From Octopus sinensis (Eukaryota), in contig NW_021824139.1 in assembly GCF_006345805.1 (NCBI RefSeq), forward strand, positions 1-20,248: 20,248 nucleotides of DNA. The letters are read 5' to 3'. Below are positions 1,161 through 16,930 of this stretch, one piece after another. Each line of letters begins with the position of its first letter. Within the stretch, counting starts at the first letter, position 1. The notes under the pieces are model-generated. The model had not been told where the DNA came from, did no database searches, and was given only the letters and a program-made list of their open reading frames with translations. The position numbers and the translations under genes were made by a program.

Positions 1161-1534
1161 ATCCTGTCGAATCCCCAAGTAACAACTGGCAGGTATTTAA
1201 TGCATGGAACATGCTTGGATGGAGTTGAAAGGCAAGAGGTAATCCCTGTTTTTCTTTACCAGTGAGTGTTGCTAATTAAACCATCACCCATGTTGCTAAT
1301 TGCACTTTAATTAGCAGATTGTTCGCAGTCATTATCTCCTGTGTTAACATTTCCTTTATTTACATTTGACAGCAGTTCATTATAAAAAATCTATTTGAAA
1401 TGTCTCATCTTGTCAATCGGTTTCTATTATTTGGTTATTAATAACCAAATTTTGAATATGTTTTCATAATGATGCCTTTAATGACTTATCATTATTATAT
1501 AACATTGAATTCTTCAGGCTGGAATTACCTATTA

Positions 1535-3240
1535 AACATATTTATATTGGAGTATTACAGTGGATGCGGATGGGGGGGAGGAAGGATATTTTTAAATCCT
1601 TCATTTACGGATGAAGTAATTTTAATTACACATAATTTTATGAGTTAAAATAAACAAAAGACACTGGAACGCCATCCTTCTCCACCGCCATTAATACAAA
1701 GATAATGAAGAACATAATCCAACCAACATCTATTTCACAAAGACACAAATATTAAAGTAAACAATATTCTAGAAAAAAACTTTCTTATTTGTTTTTTTCT
1801 TTTTTGGTTTTTCAAAGAATTTCATTCTCGTTGCTTTCTTTGAAATGTACAGTCCAGTTTTCCTTATTCTTGTTCCAAACAATTCCGTCAATTTCTCGAC
1901 TCTCTCTCTCTCCAACAGTACTGCTCTTTCCTCGCTACCAAACACCTCTTCATCCAGTCTTACTCTTATTAAATTCTTCACCTTTGCAATCTTTTCCTCA
2001 ATTCACACAATCTTATCGTAAATTATCATCATTCAGTCGGCTGCTTTCTTTGCCTCACATATTCCATTCTCCTCCTTACTTCCCCTTTCCACTCCTCATA
2101 TTACTCCTCTTTGTCTATTTCTTCTCTCCTTCTTGTTGTTGGCTCTGGGGTTCGATTAACACTCGTCTCTTTTCTCTACTAATTTTTTCTCTTGTACTTT
2201 TACCGCTTTTTTCTTCTTTTTCAGTTTTGGGCGGTGACTCCGCACTTGTTCTTTTTCTGCCCCCTATTTCCTCCTCCTTTTCCTCCACCACTATTACTTC
2301 CTCCACCTCTGCTTAGTTCTCCGTTCTTTCCTCGTCTCTGGGGACACCTTGCCTTCATGTGTCCTCTTGTACCGCAATTATAACATATTGGAGGCTTCTC
2401 CTCCACCACAATTCTCAGCCGGGTGTCATCGGGGAGCACCAACTCCTCTGCTATCTTGTGCAAGTCAGGCAGGGTTATATGGACCAAGATTTACAGTCTA
2501 AATCTCCATCAGTTTATCTCAGCCAATTTTGCCACCTTGATAATCTTGGTCTCCTCCTCACAGTTGTACAGGATAGCTTCCAACAGCCATTCCTCCTCTT
2601 TTTTGGGTGGCACTCTCCCTATCTGTACTCTTGCCACTCTTTTACCACATTAGGTTGGCAAAAGTGCCCACCTGGCTGATCTCAACAGCATCGTGGAGTA
2701 CTTTTTCGTTTCCTCCTCGTTCACGAAGTGAACCTCCACCGTGCCGTACTTCCTCCCCCGAGTATAAACCGTCGTTAACTCCCTTCACTTCGCTCAGGCA
2801 TTCATCTGCTACTTCCACTCTTTTGTTTCTACATCCAGCATTCTGTATATTATTATTTCCTCTCTGCTTTTCATCGCTTCTCCCCGGGGTATCAGCCTAA
2901 GGCAGTCTCCTCTTTTTTAAATAATCCTTGTACTTTCGAAATCCTTCTGCTCCAACACCAATTCTTTCAATCGCAGAATGTCAGCTGGCAGGCTTTTGCC
3001 CGCCACCGCGGCGTACTGCCTATTCGTTGTTCCTCCATTTCACCCAAAAATGGGGAAGAAAAAGAAACAACAATAACAACAATTAACAAATCTCAAAAAT
3101 ATAACAGTATCCAAAGTACAACAATGCACAACTCGCATCGACAATGCTATTCAAATTTTCTAAGACCCACAAAAGAAAAACAACATTATTTCATTACTTA
3201 AACATGCAAGTGGTTGTTGTTAATAGAAATTCAAACGCGC
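1535..3240 (-). mobile_element. Non-LTR element carrying the ORF1 above; no ORF2 seen
   Basis: About 200 nt of T-rich 5'UTR (3039-3240), ORF1, then about 230 nt ending in a C-tract, TGTAAT and AATATAAA. This layout resembles the Tx1 3' end at 16170-16291. Boundaries are approximate. Confidence 0.5.
1769..3038 (-). pseudogene. Decayed Tx1/L1-type LINE ORF1 (gag-like; RRM-like region plus CCHC zinc knuckle), with several stops and frameshifts
   Basis: Manual minus-strand translation gives YAAVAGKSLPADILRLKELV, then VYTRGRKYGTVEVHFVNEEE, RVARVQIGRVPPK, ELVLPDDTRLRIVVEEKPPICYNCGTRGHMKARCP (C-x2-C-x4-H-x4-C), a K/E-rich linker, and KNLIRVRLDEEVFG...MKFFEKPK*. Probable ATG at 3038. Confidence 0.8.
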
Positions 3241-3723
3241 CGGTTTCAAATTCCCGTAAGCCTATACAATATTATTACAACCATTTTTACTTCTATACAC
3301 TTTCAAAGAGTAGATGAAAACCTATGGTTGCAGAAAGGGATCACCTCAGCAAATTTAAAGTTTTGGGCCCAAAAAACTTAAGGATGGAAGGGATTCCTTA
3401 ACACATAGCTTATACTTATTTATATTTACTCTGAAGTAAGGGTCCCTCAAAATAACAGACCATTCCAAAGAATATCTTTTCTCATTACTCTTTAAACCAT
3501 GTATATAAGAGGCAAGTGTAGTAGAATTAAAGTGGGCCCTATGCCTACTGTACTGCCTTTATAAAATTTATCTAAATTACCCTCCTCTTTAGCAACGCAT
3601 GACTAATCTAAAAGTTAAACCCAGCAGACTAGTTCAAATTTTCTGACACCCAGCCACCAAAAAAAAACGAATTATTTTATTGCTAATCATGCAGGTGGTC
3701 GTTGTTAATAGAAATCCAAACCG

Positions 3724-4695: not shown

Positions 4696-4795
4696 GGCGT
4701 GCTGGCAGAAACGTTAGCACGCCGGGCGAAATGCTTAGCGGTATTTCATCTGCCGCTACGTTCTGTGTTCAAATTCCACCGTGGTCGCCATTGCC
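4696..4795 (+). mobile_element. 5' head of the second SINE family, 3' truncated
   Basis: GGCGTGCTGGCAGAAACGTTAGCACGCCGGGCGAAATGCTTAGCGGTATTTC...GTTCAAATTCC is near-identical to 12429-12512. Confidence 0.9.
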
Positions 4796-4849
4796 TGAAG
4801 GCAAAACTGCACCAGGAATGGGTTTCAATTCCTATATATATACCTTTTA

Positions 4850-7384: not shown

Positions 7385-7465
7385 ATAATGGCGGTGCTCC
7401 AGCAGAATGGTGGTGCCCCAGCATGGCACAGCTCGTGAGATGAAACTAGATAAAATAAAATAAAA
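7385..7465 (+). mobile_element. CORE-SINE extreme 3' tail with a short internal duplication
   Basis: ATGGCGGTGCTCCAGCA followed by ATGGTGGTGCCCCAGCATGGCACAGC...TGAAACTAGATAAAATAAAA. Confidence 0.65.
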
Positions 7466-7825
7466 TCATCATCATTGTTTAATGTCCATTCTCCATGCTA
7501 GCATGGGTTGGACGGTTCGACCGGGGATCTGGGAAGCCAGAAGGCTGCACCAGGCTCCAGTCTTATCTGGCAATGTTTCTACAGCTGGATGCCCTTCCTA
7601 ACGCCAACCACTCCGTGAGTGTAGTAGGTGCTTTTTACGTGCCACCTGCACATGTGCCAGGCGAGAGAGGCAACGGCCACGGTCGGATTGGTGCATTTTA
7701 CGTGCAACCGGCACGGAAGCCAGTCGAGGCGGTGCTGGCATCGGCCACGAGTCGGATAGTGCTTTTTACGTACCACCAGACCAGGGGTTCTGGCTGGTTC
7801 AATTGGATTTCGATTCGAATTGAAT
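7466..7825 (-). mobile_element. RTE distal 3'UTR copy with (GAT)n tail (5'-truncated LINE or derived non-autonomous element)
   Basis: CATCATCAT...CCATGCTAGCATGGGTTGGAC...GGATGCCCTTCCTAACGCCAACCAC matches the 3' ends of the RT-bearing copies at 7858-8623 and 8635-11515. Confidence 0.85.
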
Positions 7826-7857
7826 ATATATAATATATATAAAATAATATATATATA

Positions 7858-8623
7858 TGAGAGAAATGCTGGACATAACAAGCATCGGATGTGGCATGCA
7901 AGAAAGAAGTTTGCGCTGGTATAGTCATGTACTCCGGATGGATGAGGAGAGATGTGCGAAGAAGTGCCACTCCCAAACAGTTGAAGGTATCCGGGGTAGA
8001 GGTAGACCCAGGAAGACATGGAATGAGGTGATCAAGCTTGATCTTCGAGCGTTGGGCCTCACAGAGGCAATGACGAAAGACCGAGACCTCTGGAGATATG
8101 CTGTGACAGCGAAGACACGACAAATAACGTGAGGCTGTTTCCTGCACCAGCTTCACATAACAGCCCCAACCCATCGAAAATACCTTGGATCGCAGGACGG
8201 CCTACTGTGCTTACCTTGGATCGTAGGGTGACCTGCTGTGCTTGAGGAGACCTACTGAGTCAAGTACATCAACATCGAAATAAAAATCAAATGGAAATTG
8301 TAGTTGTGATACCCGTGCCAGTGGCACATACAAAACACCATCTCAACGAGGCTGATGCCACCGCCGTCTTGACTGGCTTCCGTGCTGGGGGCACATAAAA
8401 AGCAACAACCGATTGTGGCCGCTGCCAACCTCCTGGGGTACCTGTGCTGGTGGCAAGAAAGAAGCGCCCTCTAAACTCAGAGTGGTTGGCGTTAGGAAGG
8501 GCATCCAGCTGTAGAGACAATACCTGATCAGATTGGAGCCTGGGGCAGCCTCCTGGCTTCCCAGACGACGGTCGAACTGTCCAACCCATGCTCGCATGGA
8601 AAACTGACGTTAAACGATGATGA
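7858..8623 (+). mobile_element. 5'-truncated RTE-clade LINE: RT C-terminus (7857-8132), 3'UTR and (GAT)n tail
   Basis: ORF ...QERSLRWYSHVLRMDEE...VEGIRGRGRPRKTWNEVIKLDL...DRDLWR is the typical RTE post-RT C-terminus. The 3'UTR contains a 31-bp tandem duplication (8181-8242) and ends GTTAAACGATGATGAT. Confidence 0.9.
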
Positions 8624-8807
8624 TATATATATATCATCATCATCATCATCATCATCATTTAGCGTCCGTTTTCCATGCTAGCATGGGTTGGACGGTTCAA
8701 CTGGGGTCTGGGAGCCCGAAGGCTGCACCAGGCCAGTCAGATCTGGCAGTGTTTCTACAGCTGGATGCCCTTCCTAACGCCAACCACTCCGAGAGTGTAG
8801 TGGGTGA

Positions 8808-9058
8808 TTTTATGTGCCACCGACACAGGTGCCAGACGAGGCTGGCGAACGGCCACGCTCGGATGGTGTTTTTATGTGCCACCGACACAGGTGCCAGACG
8901 AGGCTGGCGAACGGCCACGCTCGGATGGTGTTTTTATGTGCCACCGACACAGGTGCCAGACGAGGCTGGCAGACGGCCACGCTCGGATGGTGGTGTTTTT
9001 ATGTGCCACCGACACAGGTGCCAGATGAGGCTGGCGGACGGCCACGATCGGATGGTGT
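8808..9058. repeat. 62-bp minisatellite, about 4 copies, from an RTE 3'UTR module
   Basis: TTTTATGTGCCACCGACACAGGTGCCAGACGAGGCTGGCGAACGGCCACGCTCGGATGGTGT repeated head-to-tail. Confidence 0.9.
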
Positions 9059-11079
9059 TTGTTACGTCCCCAAAGCACGGAGGCCAGTCTATGCGGTACT
9101 GGCTACGGCCACGTTCGGATGATTTTCTTGTGTGCCACCGGCACTGTACCACAAAGATACAAATTCCATTTATGTTCATCTATTTTGATTTGTTTTGATT
9201 TGATTTGATTTGATTTTCACTTGCCTCAACAGGTCTTCACAAGTGTCACAAGAAGGAAGGTATGCACAGGTGGACTGACTACGTCCCAGGTAGGGGCCAC
9301 GGGTTATGGCCTGACTAGTCTTGCCGGGTCTTCGGATGGTGTTTTTATGTGCCACCGACACAGGTGCCAGATGAGGCTGGCGAACGGCCACGATCGGATG
9401 GTGTTTGTCGCGTGCCCACAGCACGGAGGCCAGTCGATGCGGTACTGGCTACTGCCACGTTCGGATGGTTTTCTTGTGTGCCACCGGCACTGGTACCACA
9501 AAGATACAAATTCCATTGATGTTCATCTATTTTGATTTGATTTGATTTGATTTGATTTGATTTTCACTTGCCTCAACAGGTCTTCACAAGTGTCACAAGA
9601 AGGAAGGAAGGTATGCACAGGTGGACTGACTACGTCCCAGGCAGGGGCCACGGGTTATGGCCTGACTAGTCTTGCCGGGTCTTCGGTTGGTGTTTTTATG
9701 TGCCACCGACACAGGTGCCAGATGAGGCTGGCGGACGGCCACGATCGGATGGTGTTTGTTATGTGCCCACATCACAGAGGCCAGTCGATGCGGTACTGGC
9801 TACGGCCACGTTCAGATGGTTTTCTTGTGTGCCACCGGTACTGGTACCACAAAGATACAAATTCCATTGATGTTCATCTATTTGATTTGGTTTGATTTGA
9901 TTTGATTTGATTTTGATTTGATTTTCACTTGCCTCAACAGGTCTACACAAGTGTCACACACTTGCCTCAACAGGTCTTCACAAGTGTCATAAGTAGGAAG
10001 GTATGCACAGGTGGACTGACTACGTCGCCGGGTCTTCGGATGGTGTTTTTATGTGCCACCGACACAGGTGCCAGATGTGGCTGGCGAACGGCCACGATCG
10101 GATGGTTTTCTTGTGTGCCACCGGTACTGGAACCACAAAGATACAAATTCCATTGATGTTCATCTATTTTGATTTGGTTTGATTTTCACTTGCCTCAACA
10201 GGTCTTCACAAGTGTCACACACTTGCCTCAACAGGTCTCCACAAGTGTCACACACTTGCCTCTGCCTCAACAGGTCTTCACAGAGTGTCACACACTTGCC
10301 TCTGCCTCAACAGGTCTTCACAAGTGTCATAAGAGGGAAGGTATGCACAGGTGGACTGACTACGTCGCCGGGTCTTTGGATGGTGTTTTTATGTGCCACC
10401 GACACAGGTGCCAGATGAGGCTGGCGAACGGCCACGATCAGATGGTGTTTGTTGTGCCCACAGCACCGAGGCCAGTCGATGCGGTACTGGCTACGGCCAC
10501 GTTCGGATGGTTTTCTTGTGTGCCACCGGTACTGGAACCACAAAGATACAAATTCCATTGATATTCATCTATTTTGATTTGGTTTGATTTTCCCTTGCCT
10601 CAACAGGTCTTCACAAGGGTCACACACTTGCCTCAACAGGTCTCCACAAGTGTCACACACTTGCCTCTGCCTCAACAGGTCTTCACAAGTGTCACAAGAG
10701 GGAAGGTATGCACAGGTGGACTGACTACGTCGCCGGGTCTTCGGATGGTGTCTTTATGTGCCACCGGCACAGGTGCCAGATGAGGCTGGCGGACGGCCAC
10801 GATCGGATGGTGTTTGTTGTGCCCACAGCACGGAGGCCAGTCGATGCGGTACTGGCTACGGCCACGTTTGGGTGGTTTTCTTGTGTGCCACCGGCACTGG
10901 TACCACAAAGAATACAATTCCACTGATGTTCATCTATTTTGATTTGTTTTGATTTGATTTGATTTTCACTTGCCTCAACAGGTCTTCATAAGTGTCACAA
11001 GAAGGAAGGTATGCACGGGACTGACTACGTCCCAGGCAGGGGCCACGGGTTATGGCCTGACTAGTCTTGCCGGGTCTTC
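8985..11079. repeat. Tandem array of 6 units (337-365 bp) of the RTE proximal 3'UTR
   Basis: The junction GCCGGGTCTT(C/T) ends at 9333, 9684, 10037, 10377, 10742 and 11079; only the last continues into the RT ORF. Confidence 0.92.
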
Positions 11080-11513
11080 TCACGCACAGCATACTTCCAT
11101 AGGTCTCGGTCTCTAGACATTTCCTTAGTGAGACCTAAAGTTCGAAGGTCGTGCTTCACCACCTCGTCCCAGGTTTTCCTGGGTCTACCTCTTCCACAGG
11201 TTCCCTCAACTGCTAGGGTGTAGCACTTTTGCACACAACTATCTTCAGCCTTTCTCGTCACATGACCATACCAGCGCAGCCGTCTCTCTTGCACGCCACA
11301 GCTGACGCTTCTTAGGTTCAACTTTTCTCTCAAGGAACTTACACTCTGACGATTATGAACACTGACATTACACATCCATCGGAGCATACTGGCTTCATTT
11401 CTTGCGAGCTTACGCATATCCTCAGCAGTCACGGCCCATGTTTCACTACCATGTAGCATGGCTGTACGTACACATGCATCATACAGTCTGCCTTTTACTC
11501 TGAGCGAGAGGCC
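11061..11513 (-). pseudogene. RTE ORF2 C-terminal fragment with an open frame
   Basis: GLSLRVKGRLYDACVRTAMLHGSETWAV...RRLRWYGHVTRK...GRGRPRKTWDEVVKHDL...DRDLWKYAVREKTRQD*; the YGSETW-like and LRWxGHV motifs are diagnostic of RTE. Confidence 0.9.
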
Positions 11514-11515
11514 TT

Positions 11516-11540
11516 ATATATATATATGTATATGTGTATA

Positions 11541-11622
<82 letters not shown>

Positions 11623-12000
11623 ATTTCTGTGTGTATGTATGTGGTATGTATGTATGTATTATGCATGTATGTACGGATGTGTGTGTGTATGTACGTATGT
11701 ACGTAAGTATGTGTGCACGTATATATGTATTATGTATGTATTATGTATGCGTATATGTACGTATGTACGTCTGTATATACGTATGCATGTACGTATGGAC
11801 GTATGTATGTATGTATGTATGTGTATGTTTGTATGTATGTATGTATGTACGTAAGAATGTATGTACGTAAGAATGTACGTAAGTATGTATGTATGTATGT
11901 ATGTACGTATTATGTATGTATGTATGTACGTATGTACGTATGTATATACGTATGCATGTACGTATGTATGTATGTATGTGTGTGTGTGTGTGCGTGCGTG
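11516..12000 (+). repeat. (AT)n followed by a degenerate (TATG)n/(TACG)n and (TG)n microsatellite
   Basis: Direct low-complexity runs; source of the YVCM/HTYI ORFs. Confidence 0.95.
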
Positions 12001-12428: not shown

Positions 12429-12659
12429 GGCGCGAGCTGGCAGGAACGTTTGCACGCCGGGCGAAATGCTTAGCAGTATTTCGTCTGCCGTTACGTTCTG
12501 GGTTCAAATTCCGCCGAGGTCGACTTAGCCTTTCATTCTTTCGGGGTCCATTAAATAAGTACCAGTTACGCACTGGGGTCGAAATAGACGACTTAATTCG
12601 TTTGTCTGTCCTTGTTTGTCCTCTCTGTGTTTAGCCCCTTGTGGGTAGTAAAGAAATAG
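12429..12659 (+). mobile_element. Near-complete young tRNA-derived SINE (A-box about 12438-12448, B-box 12501-12512, Meta/Nin-like central domain)
   Basis: TGGCAGGAACG A-box-like, GGTTCAAATTCC B-box, and GCCTTTCATTCTTTCGGGGTCCATTAAATAAGTACCAG resembling the conserved metazoan SINE domain. I cannot separate Meta/MESC from Nin by eye. Confidence 0.85.
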
Positions 12660-14752
12660 GTATTTCGTCTGCCGTTACGTTCTGAGTTCAAATTCCGCCG
12701 AGGTCGACTTTGCCTTTCATTCTTTCGGGGTCCATTAAATAAGTACCAGTTACGCACTGGGGTCGATACAGACGACTTAATCCGTTTGTCTGTCCTTGTT
12801 TGTCCACTCTGTGTTTAGCCCCTTCTGGGTAGTAAAGAAATAGGTATTTCGTCTGCCGTTACGTTCTGAGTTCAAATTCCGCCGAGGTCGACTTTGCCTT
12901 TCATCCTTTCGGGGTCGATTAAATAAGTACCAGTTACGCACTGGGGTCGATATAGTCGACTTAATCCGTTTGTCTGTCCTTGTTTGTCCCGTCTGGGTTT
13001 ATCCCCTTATGGGTAGTAAAGAAATAGGTATTTCGTCTGCCGTTACGTTCTGAGTTCAAATTCCGCCGAGGTCGACTTTGCCTTTCATCCTTTCGGGGTC
13101 CATTAAATAAGTACCAGTTACGCACTAGGGTCGATATTACCGACTTAATCCGTTTGTCTGTCCTTGTTTGTCCCGTCTGTGTTTAGCCCCTTGTGGGTAG
13201 TAAAGAAATAGGTATTTCATCTGCCGTTACGTTCTGGGTTCAAATTCCGCCGAGGTCGACCTTGCCCTTCATCCTTTCGGGGTCGATAAATTAAGTACCA
13301 GTTACGCACTGGGGTCGATATAATCGACTTAATCCGTTTGTCTGTCCTTGTTTGTCCCGTCTGTGTATATCCCCTTGTGGGTAGTAAAGAAATAGGCATT
13401 TCGTCTGCCGTTACGTTCTGGGTTCAAATTCCGCCGCGGTCGACTTTGCCTTTCATCCTTTCGGGGTCCATTAAATAAGTACCAGTTACGCACTGGGGTC
13501 GATATAGTCGACTTAATCCGTTTGTCTGTCCTTGTTTGTCCCGTCTGTGTTTAGCCCCTTGGGGTAGTAAAGAAATAGGTATTTCATCTGCCGTTACGTT
13601 CTGGGTTCAAATTCCGCCGAGGTCGACCTTGCCCTTCATCCTTTCGGGGTCGATAAATTAAGTACCAGTTACGCACTGGGGTCGATATAATCGACTTAAT
13701 CCGTTTGTCTGTCCTTGTTTGTCCCGTCTGTGTATATCCCCTTGTGGGTAGTAAAGAAATAGGCATTTCGTCTGCCGTTACGTTCTGGGTTCAAATTCCG
13801 CCGCGGTCGACTTTGCCTTTCATCCTTTCGGGGTCCATTAAATAAGTACCAGTTACGCACTGGGGTCGATATAGTCGACTTAATCCGTTTGTCTGTCCTT
13901 GTTTGTCCCGTCTGTGTTTAGCCCCTTGTGGGTAGTAAAGAAATAGGTATTTCATCTGCCGTTACGTTCTGGGTTCAAATTCCGCCGAGGTCGACCTTGC
14001 CTTTCATCCTTTCGGGGTCGATAAATTAAGTACCAGTTACGCACTGGGGTCGATATAATCGACTTAATCCGTTTGTCTGTCCTTGTTTGTCCCGTCTGTG
14101 TATATCCCCTTGTGGGTAGTAAAGAAATAGGCATTTCGTCTGCCGTTACGTTCTGGGTTCAAATTCCGCCGCGGTCGACTTTGCCTTTCATCCTTTCGGG
14201 GTCGATTAAATAAGTACCAGTTACGCACTGGGGTCGATATAGTCGACTTAATCCGTTTGTCTGTCCTTGTTTGTCCCGTCTGTGTTAAGCCCCTTGTGGG
14301 TAGTAAAGAAATAGGTATTTCGTCTGCCCTTACGTTCTGAGTTCAAATTCCGCCGAGGTCGACTTTGCCTTTCATCCTTTCGGGGTCCATTAAATAAGTA
14401 CCAGTTACGCACTAGGGTCGATATTACCGACTTAATCCGTTTGTCTGTCCTTGTTTGTCCCGTCTGTGTTTAGCCCCTTGTGGGTAGTAAAGAAATAGGT
14501 ATTTCTTCTGCCGTTACGTTATGAGTTCAAATTCCGCCGAGGTCGACTTTGCCTTTCATCCTTTCGGGGTCCATTAAATAAGTACCAGTTACGCACTGGG
14601 GTCGATGTAGTCGACTTAATCCGTTTGTCTGTCCTTGTTTGTCCCGTCTGTGTTTATCCCCTTATGGGTAGTAAAGAAATAGGTATTTCGTCTGCCGTTA
14701 CGTTCTGAGTTCAACAATTCCGCCGAGGTCGACTTTGCCTTTCATCCTTTCG
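12476..14752 (+). repeat. SINE-derived satellite: 12 full 184-bp units plus one partial
   Basis: Units start at 12476, 12660, 12844, 13028, 13212, 13396, 13579, 13763, 13947, 14131, 14315, 14499 and 14683 (partial). Confidence 0.97.
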
Positions 14753-14754
14753 GA

Positions 14755-15470: not shown

Positions 15471-15539
15471 TCTGCTATTCATACAGGCGCACAAGAAGTG
15501 TATGAACATACACACTACTTGTCTTTATACTTCTCTGTC

Positions 15540-15541
15540 TG

Positions 15542-15625
<84 letters not shown>

Positions 15626-15759
15626 ACTATCTATCTATCTATCTATCTAACTATCTATCTATCTATCTCTCTTTCTATCTATCTATCTATCTATCTCTCT
15701 ATCTATTTATCTATCTATCTATTTATCTATCTATCTATTTATCTATCTATCTATTTATC

Positions 15760-15790
<31 letters not shown>

Positions 15791-15793
15791 CTA
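15540..15793 (+). repeat. (ATCT)n tetranucleotide microsatellite
   Basis: About 250-bp direct run. Confidence 0.97.
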
Positions 15794-16774: not shown

Positions 16775-16881
16775 CACCTATGTATGTATGTATGTATGTA
16801 TGTATGTATGTATGTATGTATGTATGAATATATATAGATAAATAGATAGATAGATATATAGATACATATATATATATCTAT

Positions 16882-16925
<44 letters not shown>
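16775..16925 (+). repeat. (TATG)n/(TAGA)n/(TA)n microsatellite
   Basis: Direct runs. Confidence 0.95.

Positions 16926-16930
<5 letters not shown>

What the first reader, a model, noticed from the sequence alone, without database searches (positions are those of the whole stretch)
8985..11079. LINE 3'UTR concatemer: six head-to-tail copies, each restarting at the last codons of ORF2
Seen: in element sense every unit begins at GAAGACCCGGC (the ...EKTRQD* end of RT), runs through the proximal UTR, an (AATCA)n tract and structured modules, then jumps back at the same point (CCATCCGA|AGACCC, only about 2 nt of microhomology). The true tail and the ORF each occur once, at the two array ends. Inference: either one duplication followed by unequal exchange, or a reverse-transcription or rolling-circle product from a circular UTR RNA or DNA. 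It multiplies the RT-recognition region and is a satellite being born from a LINE UTR.
Basis: partly seen in the sequence, partly recalled or inferred. Interest (0 to 1): 0.7.

Follow-up and report, generated by a model that had tools for sequence, protein, structure and literature searches.

The report
Tandem-duplicated 3'UTR in a dead octopus LINE
A broken copy of a common octopus jumping gene (a LINE) carries six head-to-tail copies of a ~350-base piece of its own trailer; this is best explained by one chance duplication followed by ordinary unequal recombination, which is a known way for repeats to grow and not a new mechanism.

Summary
On the minus strand, 11079→8985 holds six units of 337-365 bp. 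Each starts at (G/A)AAGACCCGGC, 16 nt before the ORF2 stop codon. The five junctions are the same: CACCA(T/A)CC|(G/A)AAGACCCGGC, 0 expected by chance. The ORF2 end (11515→11061) and the true tail (8802→8635, ending in (ATG)n) each occur once.

The host element is a 5'-truncated non-LTR retrotransposon of an abundant octopus family whose ORF2 has the order RT, PHD finger, C-terminal domain.

All seven other copies with a complete ORF-end-to-tail stretch have one unit (UTR about 400-620 bp, against 2,426 bp here).

The units are not uniform:
- Three adjacent units share a 37-bp deletion that removes the stop codon.
- A 33-bp sub-repeat varies from 1 to 4 copies.
- One unit lacks a 67-bp module and one is a mosaic.
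- The edge units carry the most private changes.

This fits one founding duplication with 2 nt of microhomology, followed by unequal exchange. Nothing calls for reverse transcription of a circle or rolling-circle synthesis.

The conserved ~160-nt tail, the likely RT recognition region, lies outside the unit, so that region is not multiplied. Predicted folding of the unit and its modules is no better than shuffled sequence.

I could not resolve whether the array arose at this locus or in a source element, because the host genome could not be searched.

It is an ordinary case of a known kind.

The parts
11061..11515 (-). C-terminal 150 codons of LINE ORF2 (5'-truncated), stop TAG at 11063-11061
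   Evidence: The frame is open from 11513 to the stop. It is 92% identical to P0001 and 78% to an Octopus vulgaris protein. Homology to L001 stops exactly at 11515, next to (TA)n. A 262-aa query built from the sister copy L001 matches proteins with RVT_1 plus PHD over 97-100% of its length; P0122 scores RVT_1 E 3.9e-25.
10743..11079 (-). Unit U1 (A-type, 337 bp), continuous with the ORF; the most diverged unit
   Evidence: It has 11 private column differences against the L001 outgroup.
10378..10742 (-). Unit U2 (B-type, 365 bp): 37-bp deletion removing the stop codon; 3 copies of the 33-bp sub-repeat
   Evidence: It is 97.7% identical to U3.
10038..10377 (-). Unit U3 (B-type, 340 bp): 37-bp deletion; 4 copies of the 33-bp sub-repeat; lacks the middle 67-bp module; starts AAAGACC
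9685..10037 (-). Unit U4 (mosaic, 353 bp): has the B-type 37-bp deletion and 2 sub-repeats, but its substitutions are closer to the A-type units
   Evidence: 95.5-95.8% identical to U5/U6 against 90-91% to U2/U3. Structure.
9334..9684 (-). Unit U5 (A-type, 351 bp)
8985..9333 (-). Unit U6 (A-type, 349 bp), continuous with the distal UTR
   Evidence: The collapsed element (ORF + U6 + distal part) is colinear with the single-unit copy L001.
8803..8984 (-). Three further 62-bp modules of the distal UTR. With the last module of U6 they form a 62-bp x 4.1 tandem array; L001 has one module fewer
   Evidence: TRF 8803-9060, 93% matches; alignment to L001.
8635..8802 (-). True 3' tail: ~145 nt conserved across sub-families, with the palindrome CCATGCTAGCATGG, then (ATG)8
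   Evidence: Alignment of 7 tails from the window, L001 and L002 has 84% mean column identity and long invariant blocks. The terminal hairpin is predicted in all of them but shows no covariation.
11516..11613 (.). (TA)n microsatellite abutting the 5' truncation point (flank, not part of the element)
8623..8634 (.). (AT)6 spacer between this element's tail and the tail of an oppositely oriented related LINE (7858-8624, +)

Best explanation
The element at 11515→8635 (minus strand) is a dead, 5'-truncated copy of an abundant octopus non-LTR retrotransposon. Its ORF2 has the order RT, PHD finger, C-terminal domain. Its 3'UTR is about 600 nt, built of degenerate ~62-bp modules, and ends in a conserved tail plus (ATG)n.

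A ~350-bp internal DNA segment was duplicated in tandem once. The segment runs from 16 nt before the stop codon to a point inside the modular UTR. The duplication was a non-homologous event with 2 nt of microhomology (GA), such as replication template switching or end joining. It created the new junction CACCATCC-GA-AGACCC.

Once two copies lay side by side, unequal homologous exchange, replication slippage and gene conversion between misaligned units raised the number to six. The same processes shuffled unit variants: the 37-bp deletion, the changes in 33-bp and 5-bp sub-repeat number, the loss of the 67-bp module, and the mosaic unit.

Shown here: the anatomy, the identical junctions, the variant distribution, and the single-unit state of relatives. 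Inferred: the order of events and the DNA-level mechanism. The array probably does nothing for the element, which cannot transpose. It leaves the conserved 3' tail single.
For: - Five identical junctions against 0 expected by chance point to one founding event.
- The flanks are exactly colinear with the single-unit copy L001 (about 91-94% identity). This is the signature of an internal tandem duplication.
- All seven comparators with a complete ORF-end-to-tail stretch have one unit: L001; L046 at 10481-11828, 1945-3282 and 15897-14764; L047; window 7858-8633; L002 5725-6304.
- The 37-bp deletion is shared by the three adjacent units U2-U4. The 33-bp sub-repeat numbers 1, 3, 4, 2, 1, 1 along the array. 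U3 has lost one module.
- U4 combines the B-type deletion with A-type substitutions, so it is a recombinant unit.
- Pairwise identity is graded: U2-U3 97.7%, U5-U6 96.8%, U1 against the others 89-95.5%.
- Private changes per unit are 11, 2, 1, 4, 2, 5, highest at the two edges. Heterogeneity is p=0.007 counted by column, and 0.05-0.1 if four adjacent columns in U1 are merged.
- The UTR is slippage-prone at other scales too. The distal 62-bp modules number 4 here and 3 in L001.
Against: - The host genome and raw reads could not be searched. I therefore cannot show that the junction is unique to this locus, or that the array is not inherited from an array-bearing source element.
- Divergence does not date the array relative to the insertion. 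The window-private divergence of ORF and tail (about 0.5-2.6%) would predict about 1-5% divergence between units that were already present at insertion. That overlaps the observed 2.4-5.2% among most units.
- The edge-unit statistic rests on 25 substitutions and weakens when adjacent columns are merged.
- Only L001 and L046 10481-11828 are close relatives (at least 86% identity). The other comparators belong to more distant sub-families.
Confidence: 0.7

Rival explanations
1. The array was not made at this locus. It was already present in the 3'UTR of a transcribed source element (a sub-lineage with a concatemeric UTR) and was copied here by ordinary target-primed reverse transcription. Other array-bearing copies would then exist in the genome. 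The array would still have grown by duplication and unequal exchange, but in the source element's DNA.
For: - The timing is not resolved. Unit-to-unit divergence (2.4-5.2% for most pairs) is about what independent decay since insertion would give.
- Variable tandem repeats in retroelement 3'UTRs that seed satellites are documented: the Ogre 3'UTR and PisTR-A, and chicken CR1 3'UTR plus partial ORF2 and the HinfI repeat (review PMC9659126).
- All six units share 7-10 differences from L001. Some time therefore passed in a separate lineage before amplification.
Against: - Seven of seven other complete UTRs have one unit, including two close relatives.
- Uneven private divergence, with the edge units oldest, suggests that growth continued after the units stopped being copied together.
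Confidence: 0.2
2. The array is a one-shot concatemer. Either the LINE reverse transcriptase repeatedly jumped back on its template during one insertion event, or it (or a DNA polymerase) ran round a ~350-nt circular RNA or eccDNA carrying the junction.
For: - Identical junctions are what a circular template would give.
- The array is in register with the ORF and the tail, as template jumping during target-primed reverse transcription would produce. This is inference only; no tool result specifically favours it.
Against: - Units born together should be equally diverged and structurally alike. Instead there are three structural types in the order A-B-B-B-A-A, a mosaic unit, and uneven private changes. 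Later unequal exchange is needed anyway.
- Repeated jumps at only 2 nt of microhomology should give varied junctions.
- The unit shows no unusual predicted structure that could pause an RT (z=0.16).
- Relatives have one unit.
Confidence: 0.05
3. The array is an assembly artefact: a single or double unit was inflated by the assembler.
For: Tandem repeats are a classic place for copy-number errors, and I could not look at reads.
Against: - Each unit has its own substitutions and indels. Lengths are 337, 365, 340, 353, 351 and 349 bp, with 1-11 private changes. The units cannot be copies of one read pile.
- The 2.1-kb array is short compared with long reads. The same window holds a 2.3-kb array of 184-bp units and long microsatellites that assembled cleanly, which suggests a long-read assembly (inference).
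Confidence: 0.04
4. The array comes from repeated insertion of 5'-truncated copies into the same site, giving tandem TE dimers or multimers (the double-insertion route to satellites; McGurk and Barbash 2018, PMC5932611).
For: - This LINE family clusters strongly. Three copies lie at 7455-11515, each bounded by (TA)n.
- L046 and L002 also carry several copies within 20 kb.
Against: Every double-insertion junction must join the true 3' end (conserved tail plus (ATG)n) to a 5' truncation point. Here the junction joins an internal UTR position about 350 nt upstream of the tail, and the tail occurs once. This defining feature was tested and not met.
Confidence: 0.01

Closest known systems
Tandem repeats and satellites derived from the 3' end of LINEs, such as the chicken HinfI repeat from CR1 3'UTR plus partial ORF2 and the common cetacean satellite from the L1 3' end (as listed in the review PMC9659126)
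   Same: The repeat unit is a piece of a LINE 3'UTR that also takes in the very end of ORF2. The units are arranged head to tail.
   Different: Here there are only six units, still embedded in the parent element between its ORF and its tail. There is no evidence of long or multi-locus arrays. The host is a cephalopod and the LINE is of a different family.
Hypervariable 3'UTR tandem repeats of Ogre LTR retrotransposons, the source of the pea satellite PisTR-A (Macas et al. 2009, cited in PMC9659126)
   Same: The tandem repeats lie inside a retroelement's 3'UTR, and their number differs between copies of the element.
   Different: In Ogre the arrays are a family-wide, retrotransposed feature. 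Here seven of seven relatives have a single unit. Ogre is an LTR element, not a LINE.
Tandem TE dimers made by double insertion, as seeds of satellites (McGurk and Barbash 2018, PMC5932611)
   Same: A TE-derived tandem structure that unequal exchange can then expand.
   Different: The junction here is internal to the UTR, not tail-to-5'-end. The founding event was therefore a duplication of DNA and not a second insertion.
Internal VNTR or monomer arrays of retroelements (SVA VNTR, mouse L1 5'UTR monomers; my own knowledge, not tested here)
   Same: An array of a few hundred base pairs or less inside a non-LTR retroelement, variable in copy number.
   Different: Those arrays are part of the active consensus and matter for expression. 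This array sits in a dead copy and is absent from its relatives.

Membership tests
Non-LTR retrotransposon (LINE), 5'-truncated copy | ORF2 with a reverse transcriptase domain | tested here: met
   The window keeps only the C-terminal 150 codons, which match no Pfam family. They are colinear at 94% with L001, whose upstream part carries a PHD finger and the end of RT. A 262-aa query from L001 matches proteins with RVT_1 plus PHD over 97-100% of its length. P0122 scores RVT_1 E 3.9e-25 and the O. vulgaris protein P0169 scores 2e-18.
Non-LTR retrotransposon (LINE), 5'-truncated copy | Conserved 3' tail ending in a simple repeat, shared by copies truncated at different 5' points | tested here: met
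   Seven tails align at 84% mean column identity and end in (ATG)n/(GAT)n. Copies start at different 5' points: window 7810, 7858, 11515 and 19240.
Non-LTR retrotransposon (LINE), 5'-truncated copy | Apurinic-type endonuclease domain, and target-site duplications | not tested
   No full-length copy was recovered. Both flanks are (TA)n, so a duplication cannot be delimited.
LINE clade (RTE, CR1, L1-Tx1 and others, as reported for octopus in PMC13282606 and PMC9115989) | Phylogenetic placement of the RT domain among reference clades | not testable with these tools
   No reference LINE set was available. A microsatellite tail and a GRPRKTW...DR..W C-terminus fit RTE- or CR1-like elements (my own knowledge), but the clade is left open.
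Tandem array grown by unequal exchange after one founding duplication | All junctions between units are identical | tested here: met
   Five junctions with at most 1 mismatch in 19 nt, against 0 expected.
Tandem array grown by unequal exchange after one founding duplication | Variants shared by neighbouring units, recombinant units, interior more homogeneous than the edges | tested here: met
   The 37-bp deletion is in U2-U4. U4 is a mosaic. U2-U3 are 97.7% identical. Private changes are 11, 2, 1, 4, 2, 5. The statistical support is modest: p from 0.007 to 0.1 depending on how columns are counted.
Satellite DNA | Long arrays (hundreds of units or more), usually at several loci | tested here: not met
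   There are six units at this locus. The unit was not seen as an array in 60 kb of Octopus vulgaris sequence (L002, L046) or elsewhere in the window. A genome-wide census was not possible.
Double-insertion TE tandem | The junction joins the element's true 3' terminus to a 5' (truncated) start | tested here: not met
   The junction lies about 350 nt upstream of the tail. The tail and (ATG)n occur once.
Rolling-circle or circular-template concatemer | A circular molecule carrying the junction, and units uniform at birth | not testable with these tools
   There are no read, RNA or eccDNA data. The present units are not uniform.

The most novel reading that the evidence does not exclude
The six-unit UTR belongs to a still-transcribed sub-lineage of this LINE. 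The concatemer is then spread by retrotransposition, seeding the same ~350-bp array at many octopus loci. That would be a LINE-borne satellite in the act of dispersing. A first concatemerisation by RT template jumping is conceivable.
Probability: 0.12. Interest if true: 0.55.

Novelty: new member of a known kind. Interest (0 to 1): 0.22.

Why it matters
It is a clean, readable snapshot of the first steps from transposon fragment to tandem array. It shows one non-homologous duplication, then unequal exchange that sorts unit variants.

It sits in a genome where LINEs and SINEs each make up more than 10% of the sequence (PMC13282606). The same window also holds a SINE-derived 184-bp array.

It is useful for repeat annotation, because a library consensus will fragment such loci. 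It may also serve as a variable-copy-number marker.

It does not reveal a new mechanism, and it does not change what is known about LINE 3'-end recognition.

Tried and rejected
- **Protein search for other junctions.** I searched the 5.8-billion-protein collection with a composite of three junction-spanning ORFs. No protein scored E ≤ 0.001. Non-coding ORFs are evidently not called as genes there, so this says nothing about other loci.
- **Metagenome scan for the junction.** The degenerate junction 19-mer gave 38 hits in JGI metagenome contigs. All match only about 21 nt (one matches 44 nt at 86%) and none shares the unit, so they are chance matches in unrelated DNA.
- **Viral and prokaryote scans.** Viral contigs and prokaryote genome contigs gave no junction. 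A control 31-mer from the conserved tail is also absent. These collections hold no DNA of this family, so the negatives are uninformative.
- **More distant RT relatives.** P0004, P0005, P0020, P0021 and P0040 share the ORF only; their UTRs are unrelated.
- **Rfam and tRNA scans of the window.** Nothing was found.
- **Thermodynamic test of 'structured modules'.** The unit gave z=0.16. The modules, the 33-bp repeat and the tail gave z from -1.2 to +1.3, so there is no signal.
- **Dating the array against the insertion.** I polarised substitutions to compare the two ages; the result was inconclusive.
- **Double-insertion model.** Rejected from the junction sequence.
- **A reading frame extended through the units.** Rejected. 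The ORF2 frame is closed by stop codons at every junction.

Full report
**What is there.** The window is animal DNA, rich in microsatellites. The best named matches of its reverse-transcriptase fragments are Octopus vulgaris and O. bimaculoides proteins. It is therefore an octopus or a close relative; the species was not determined.

On the minus strand, 11515→11061 is an open frame of 150 codons ending ...DLWKYAVREKTRQD*. It has no Pfam match of its own. It is 92% identical in protein to P0001, and colinear at about 94% in DNA with that protein's contig L001. Upstream in L001 lie a PHD finger (E 1.6e-5) and the VDSFRYLG end of RT.

A 262-aa query built from L001 finds 240 proteins at E ≤ 1e-10. 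Many carry RVT_1 plus PHD and cover 97-100% of the query. P0122 scores RVT_1 E 3.9e-25 and the O. vulgaris protein P0169 scores 2e-18. The frame is therefore the C-terminal end of a non-LTR retrotransposon ORF2 with the order RT, PHD, C-terminal domain.

Homology to L001 stops at 11515 against a (TA)n tract, and nothing of the upstream ORF is found elsewhere in the window. This copy is 5'-truncated and dead.

**The array.** The + strand motif GCCGGGTCTT occurs six times. In element sense the units are U1 11079-10743, U2 10742-10378, U3 10377-10038, U4 10037-9685, U5 9684-9334 and U6 9333-8985, with lengths of 337-365 bp.

Each unit begins 16 nt before the ORF2 stop codon. Each ends at CACCATCC inside a ~62-bp module of the UTR. 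The junction 19-mer occurs five times with at most 1 mismatch, against none in 100 shuffles.

After U6 the element continues with three more 62-bp modules (8984-8803). It then runs into a tail (8802-8635) that ends in (ATG)8.

**What the normal element looks like.** If the ORF part is joined directly to U6 and the distal UTR, the window element aligns end to end with L001. The only length differences are small indels in the (AAATC)n tract and near the tail, and one 62-bp module. L001 has one unit.

Six more copies with a complete ORF-end-to-tail stretch also have one unit:
- L046 10481-11828 (O. vulgaris chromosome, 86% identical)
- L046 1945-3282
- L046 15897-14764
- L047 679-2025
- window 7858-8633
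- L002 5725-6304

Their UTRs are roughly 400-620 bp, against 2,426 bp here. The single-unit state is the family norm and the array is the exception.

**How the array arose.** Comparing the junction with its two parent sequences (...CACCATCCGA|GCGTGG... and ...GCGTGAGA|AGACCC...) leaves 2 nt of shared sequence. The founding event was therefore non-homologous. Five identical junctions mean it happened once.

The units are not uniform:
- U2, U3 and U4 are adjacent and share a 37-bp deletion that removes the stop codon and the proximal UTR.
- The 33-bp sub-repeat numbers 1, 3, 4, 2, 1, 1 from U1 to U6.
- U3 has lost the middle 67-bp module.
- The (AAATC)n tract varies in length.

U4 has the B-type deletion, but its substitutions are closer to the A-type units: 95.5-95.8% against 90-91%. 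That makes it a recombinant unit. U2-U3 are 97.7% identical and U5-U6 are 96.8%. U1 is the most distant.

With L001 as outgroup, private changes per unit are 11, 2, 1, 4, 2, 5, highest at the two edges. The heterogeneity is p=0.007 counted by column. It is 0.05-0.1 if four adjacent columns in U1 are treated as one or two events, so this point is suggestive only.

Together these are the textbook marks of an array that grew stepwise by unequal exchange, slippage and conversion after a single tandem duplication.

**What is not supported.**
- *A one-shot concatemer.* RT template jumping, or rolling round a circular RNA or eccDNA, would give units that are alike at birth. It still needs later unequal exchange to produce the A-B-B-B-A-A order. 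Nothing in the sequence asks for it, though sequence alone cannot exclude it.
- *Double insertion.* This model is refuted, because the junction does not contain the tail.
- *An assembly artefact.* This is unlikely because every unit has its own substitutions and indels. I could not inspect reads.
- *Multiplying the RT-recognition region.* The part conserved between sub-families is the last ~145 nt plus (ATG)n. It includes the invariant palindrome CCATGCTAGCATGG. RNAalifold predicts hairpins there, but almost without covariation. This region lies outside the unit and is present once. That it is the recognition site is an inference from its conservation and from what is known of LINEs that recognise their own 3' end.
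- *Structured modules.* The unit (z=0.16), the 62- and 67-bp modules, the 33-bp repeat and the tail (z from -1.2 to +1.3) fold no better than shuffled sequence.

**What stays open.** I could not search the host genome. Attempts through the protein collection, metagenome contigs, viral contigs and prokaryote contigs gave nothing usable. The control motif from the tail is absent from the last two.

Whether the junction is private to this locus or carried by a source element is therefore undecided. The window-private divergence of ORF and tail is about 0.5-2.6%. It would predict about 1-5% divergence between units already present at insertion, which overlaps what is seen.

Using the rate implied in PMC13282606 (Jukes-Cantor distance of 0.09 to the consensus for 25 My), unit pairs at K2P 0.024-0.052 would be roughly 3-7 My apart. 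This is a rough inference. The array is not brand new.

**Comparison with what is known.** Tandem repeats and satellites derived from retroelement 3' ends are well documented. Examples are chicken CR1 3'UTR plus partial ORF2 giving the HinfI repeat, the L1 3' end giving the common cetacean satellite, and the Ogre 3'UTR giving PisTR-A (review PMC9659126). Double insertion is another known route to TE-derived arrays (PMC5932611).

Octopus genomes are about two-thirds repeats. LINEs make up 12.9% and SINEs 11.6% (PMC13282606). In such an abundant family an occasional internal duplication is expected.

This locus is a new example of a known kind, at an early and small stage. It is not shown to be a satellite.

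**Verdict.** Interest is low.

Noticed in passing
window 12476-14753: A second TE-derived tandem array: a 184-bp unit repeated 12.4 times at 94% matches. The sequence just upstream (12430-12475) reads like the head of a tRNA-derived SINE and continues into the first unit. Pieces of the unit match dispersed copies at 8-101, 241-346 and 4740-4796. ARAGORN and Rfam find no tRNA.
   Followed up: partly
window 7455-11613: Three copies of the same LINE superfamily lie side by side in alternating orientation: 7455-7810 (-), 7858-8624 (+) and 8635-11515 (-). Every boundary abuts a (TA)n or AT-rich tract (7810-7857, 8623-8634, 11516-11613). This may reflect a preference for inserting into (TA)n microsatellites. 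L002 and L046 (O. vulgaris) also carry 3-5 copies of the family within 20 kb.
   Followed up: partly
window 8476-8793: Two LINE tails meet tail to tail with (AT)6 between them. They form an interrupted inverted repeat: 8559-8624 with 8648-8713 (86% complementary) and 8476-8536 with 8733-8793 (89%). It lies next to the array. Whether such a palindrome favours replication template switching is speculation.
   Followed up: no
L001 1-334; P0122, P0169: The RT of this LINE family carries a PHD-type zinc finger just before the VDSFRYLG strand at the end of the RT domain. Relatives with RVT_1 plus PHD are widespread, including a Branchiostoma belcheri protein. I do not know whether this architecture has been described.
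   Followed up: partly
P0130, P0209: Close homologues of this animal LINE ORF2 are deposited as 'hypothetical protein' of Salmonella enterica serovar Derby and of a Herbaspirillum metagenome bin. This is most likely eukaryotic contamination in those records.
   Followed up: no
window 8803-9060: The distal 62-bp UTR module is itself a tandem array of 4.1 copies at 93% matches. L001 has one copy fewer. All six large units share GATCG...CATCTGG in their last module, where L001 and the distal modules have GAGCG...CGTCTGG.
   Followed up: yes
window 2221-2487 (-): An ORF with a CCHC zinc knuckle (CYNCGTRGHMKARC), as in retroelement Gag proteins, sits in a region of strongly skewed composition (about 1500-3500). 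It is probably another retroelement fragment.
   Followed up: no
window 11515-11991, 15534-15793, 16779-16927: Very long microsatellites: (TA)50, (TGTA)93, (TCTA)65 and (TATA)37. The window as a whole is unusually rich in simple repeats.
   Followed up: no
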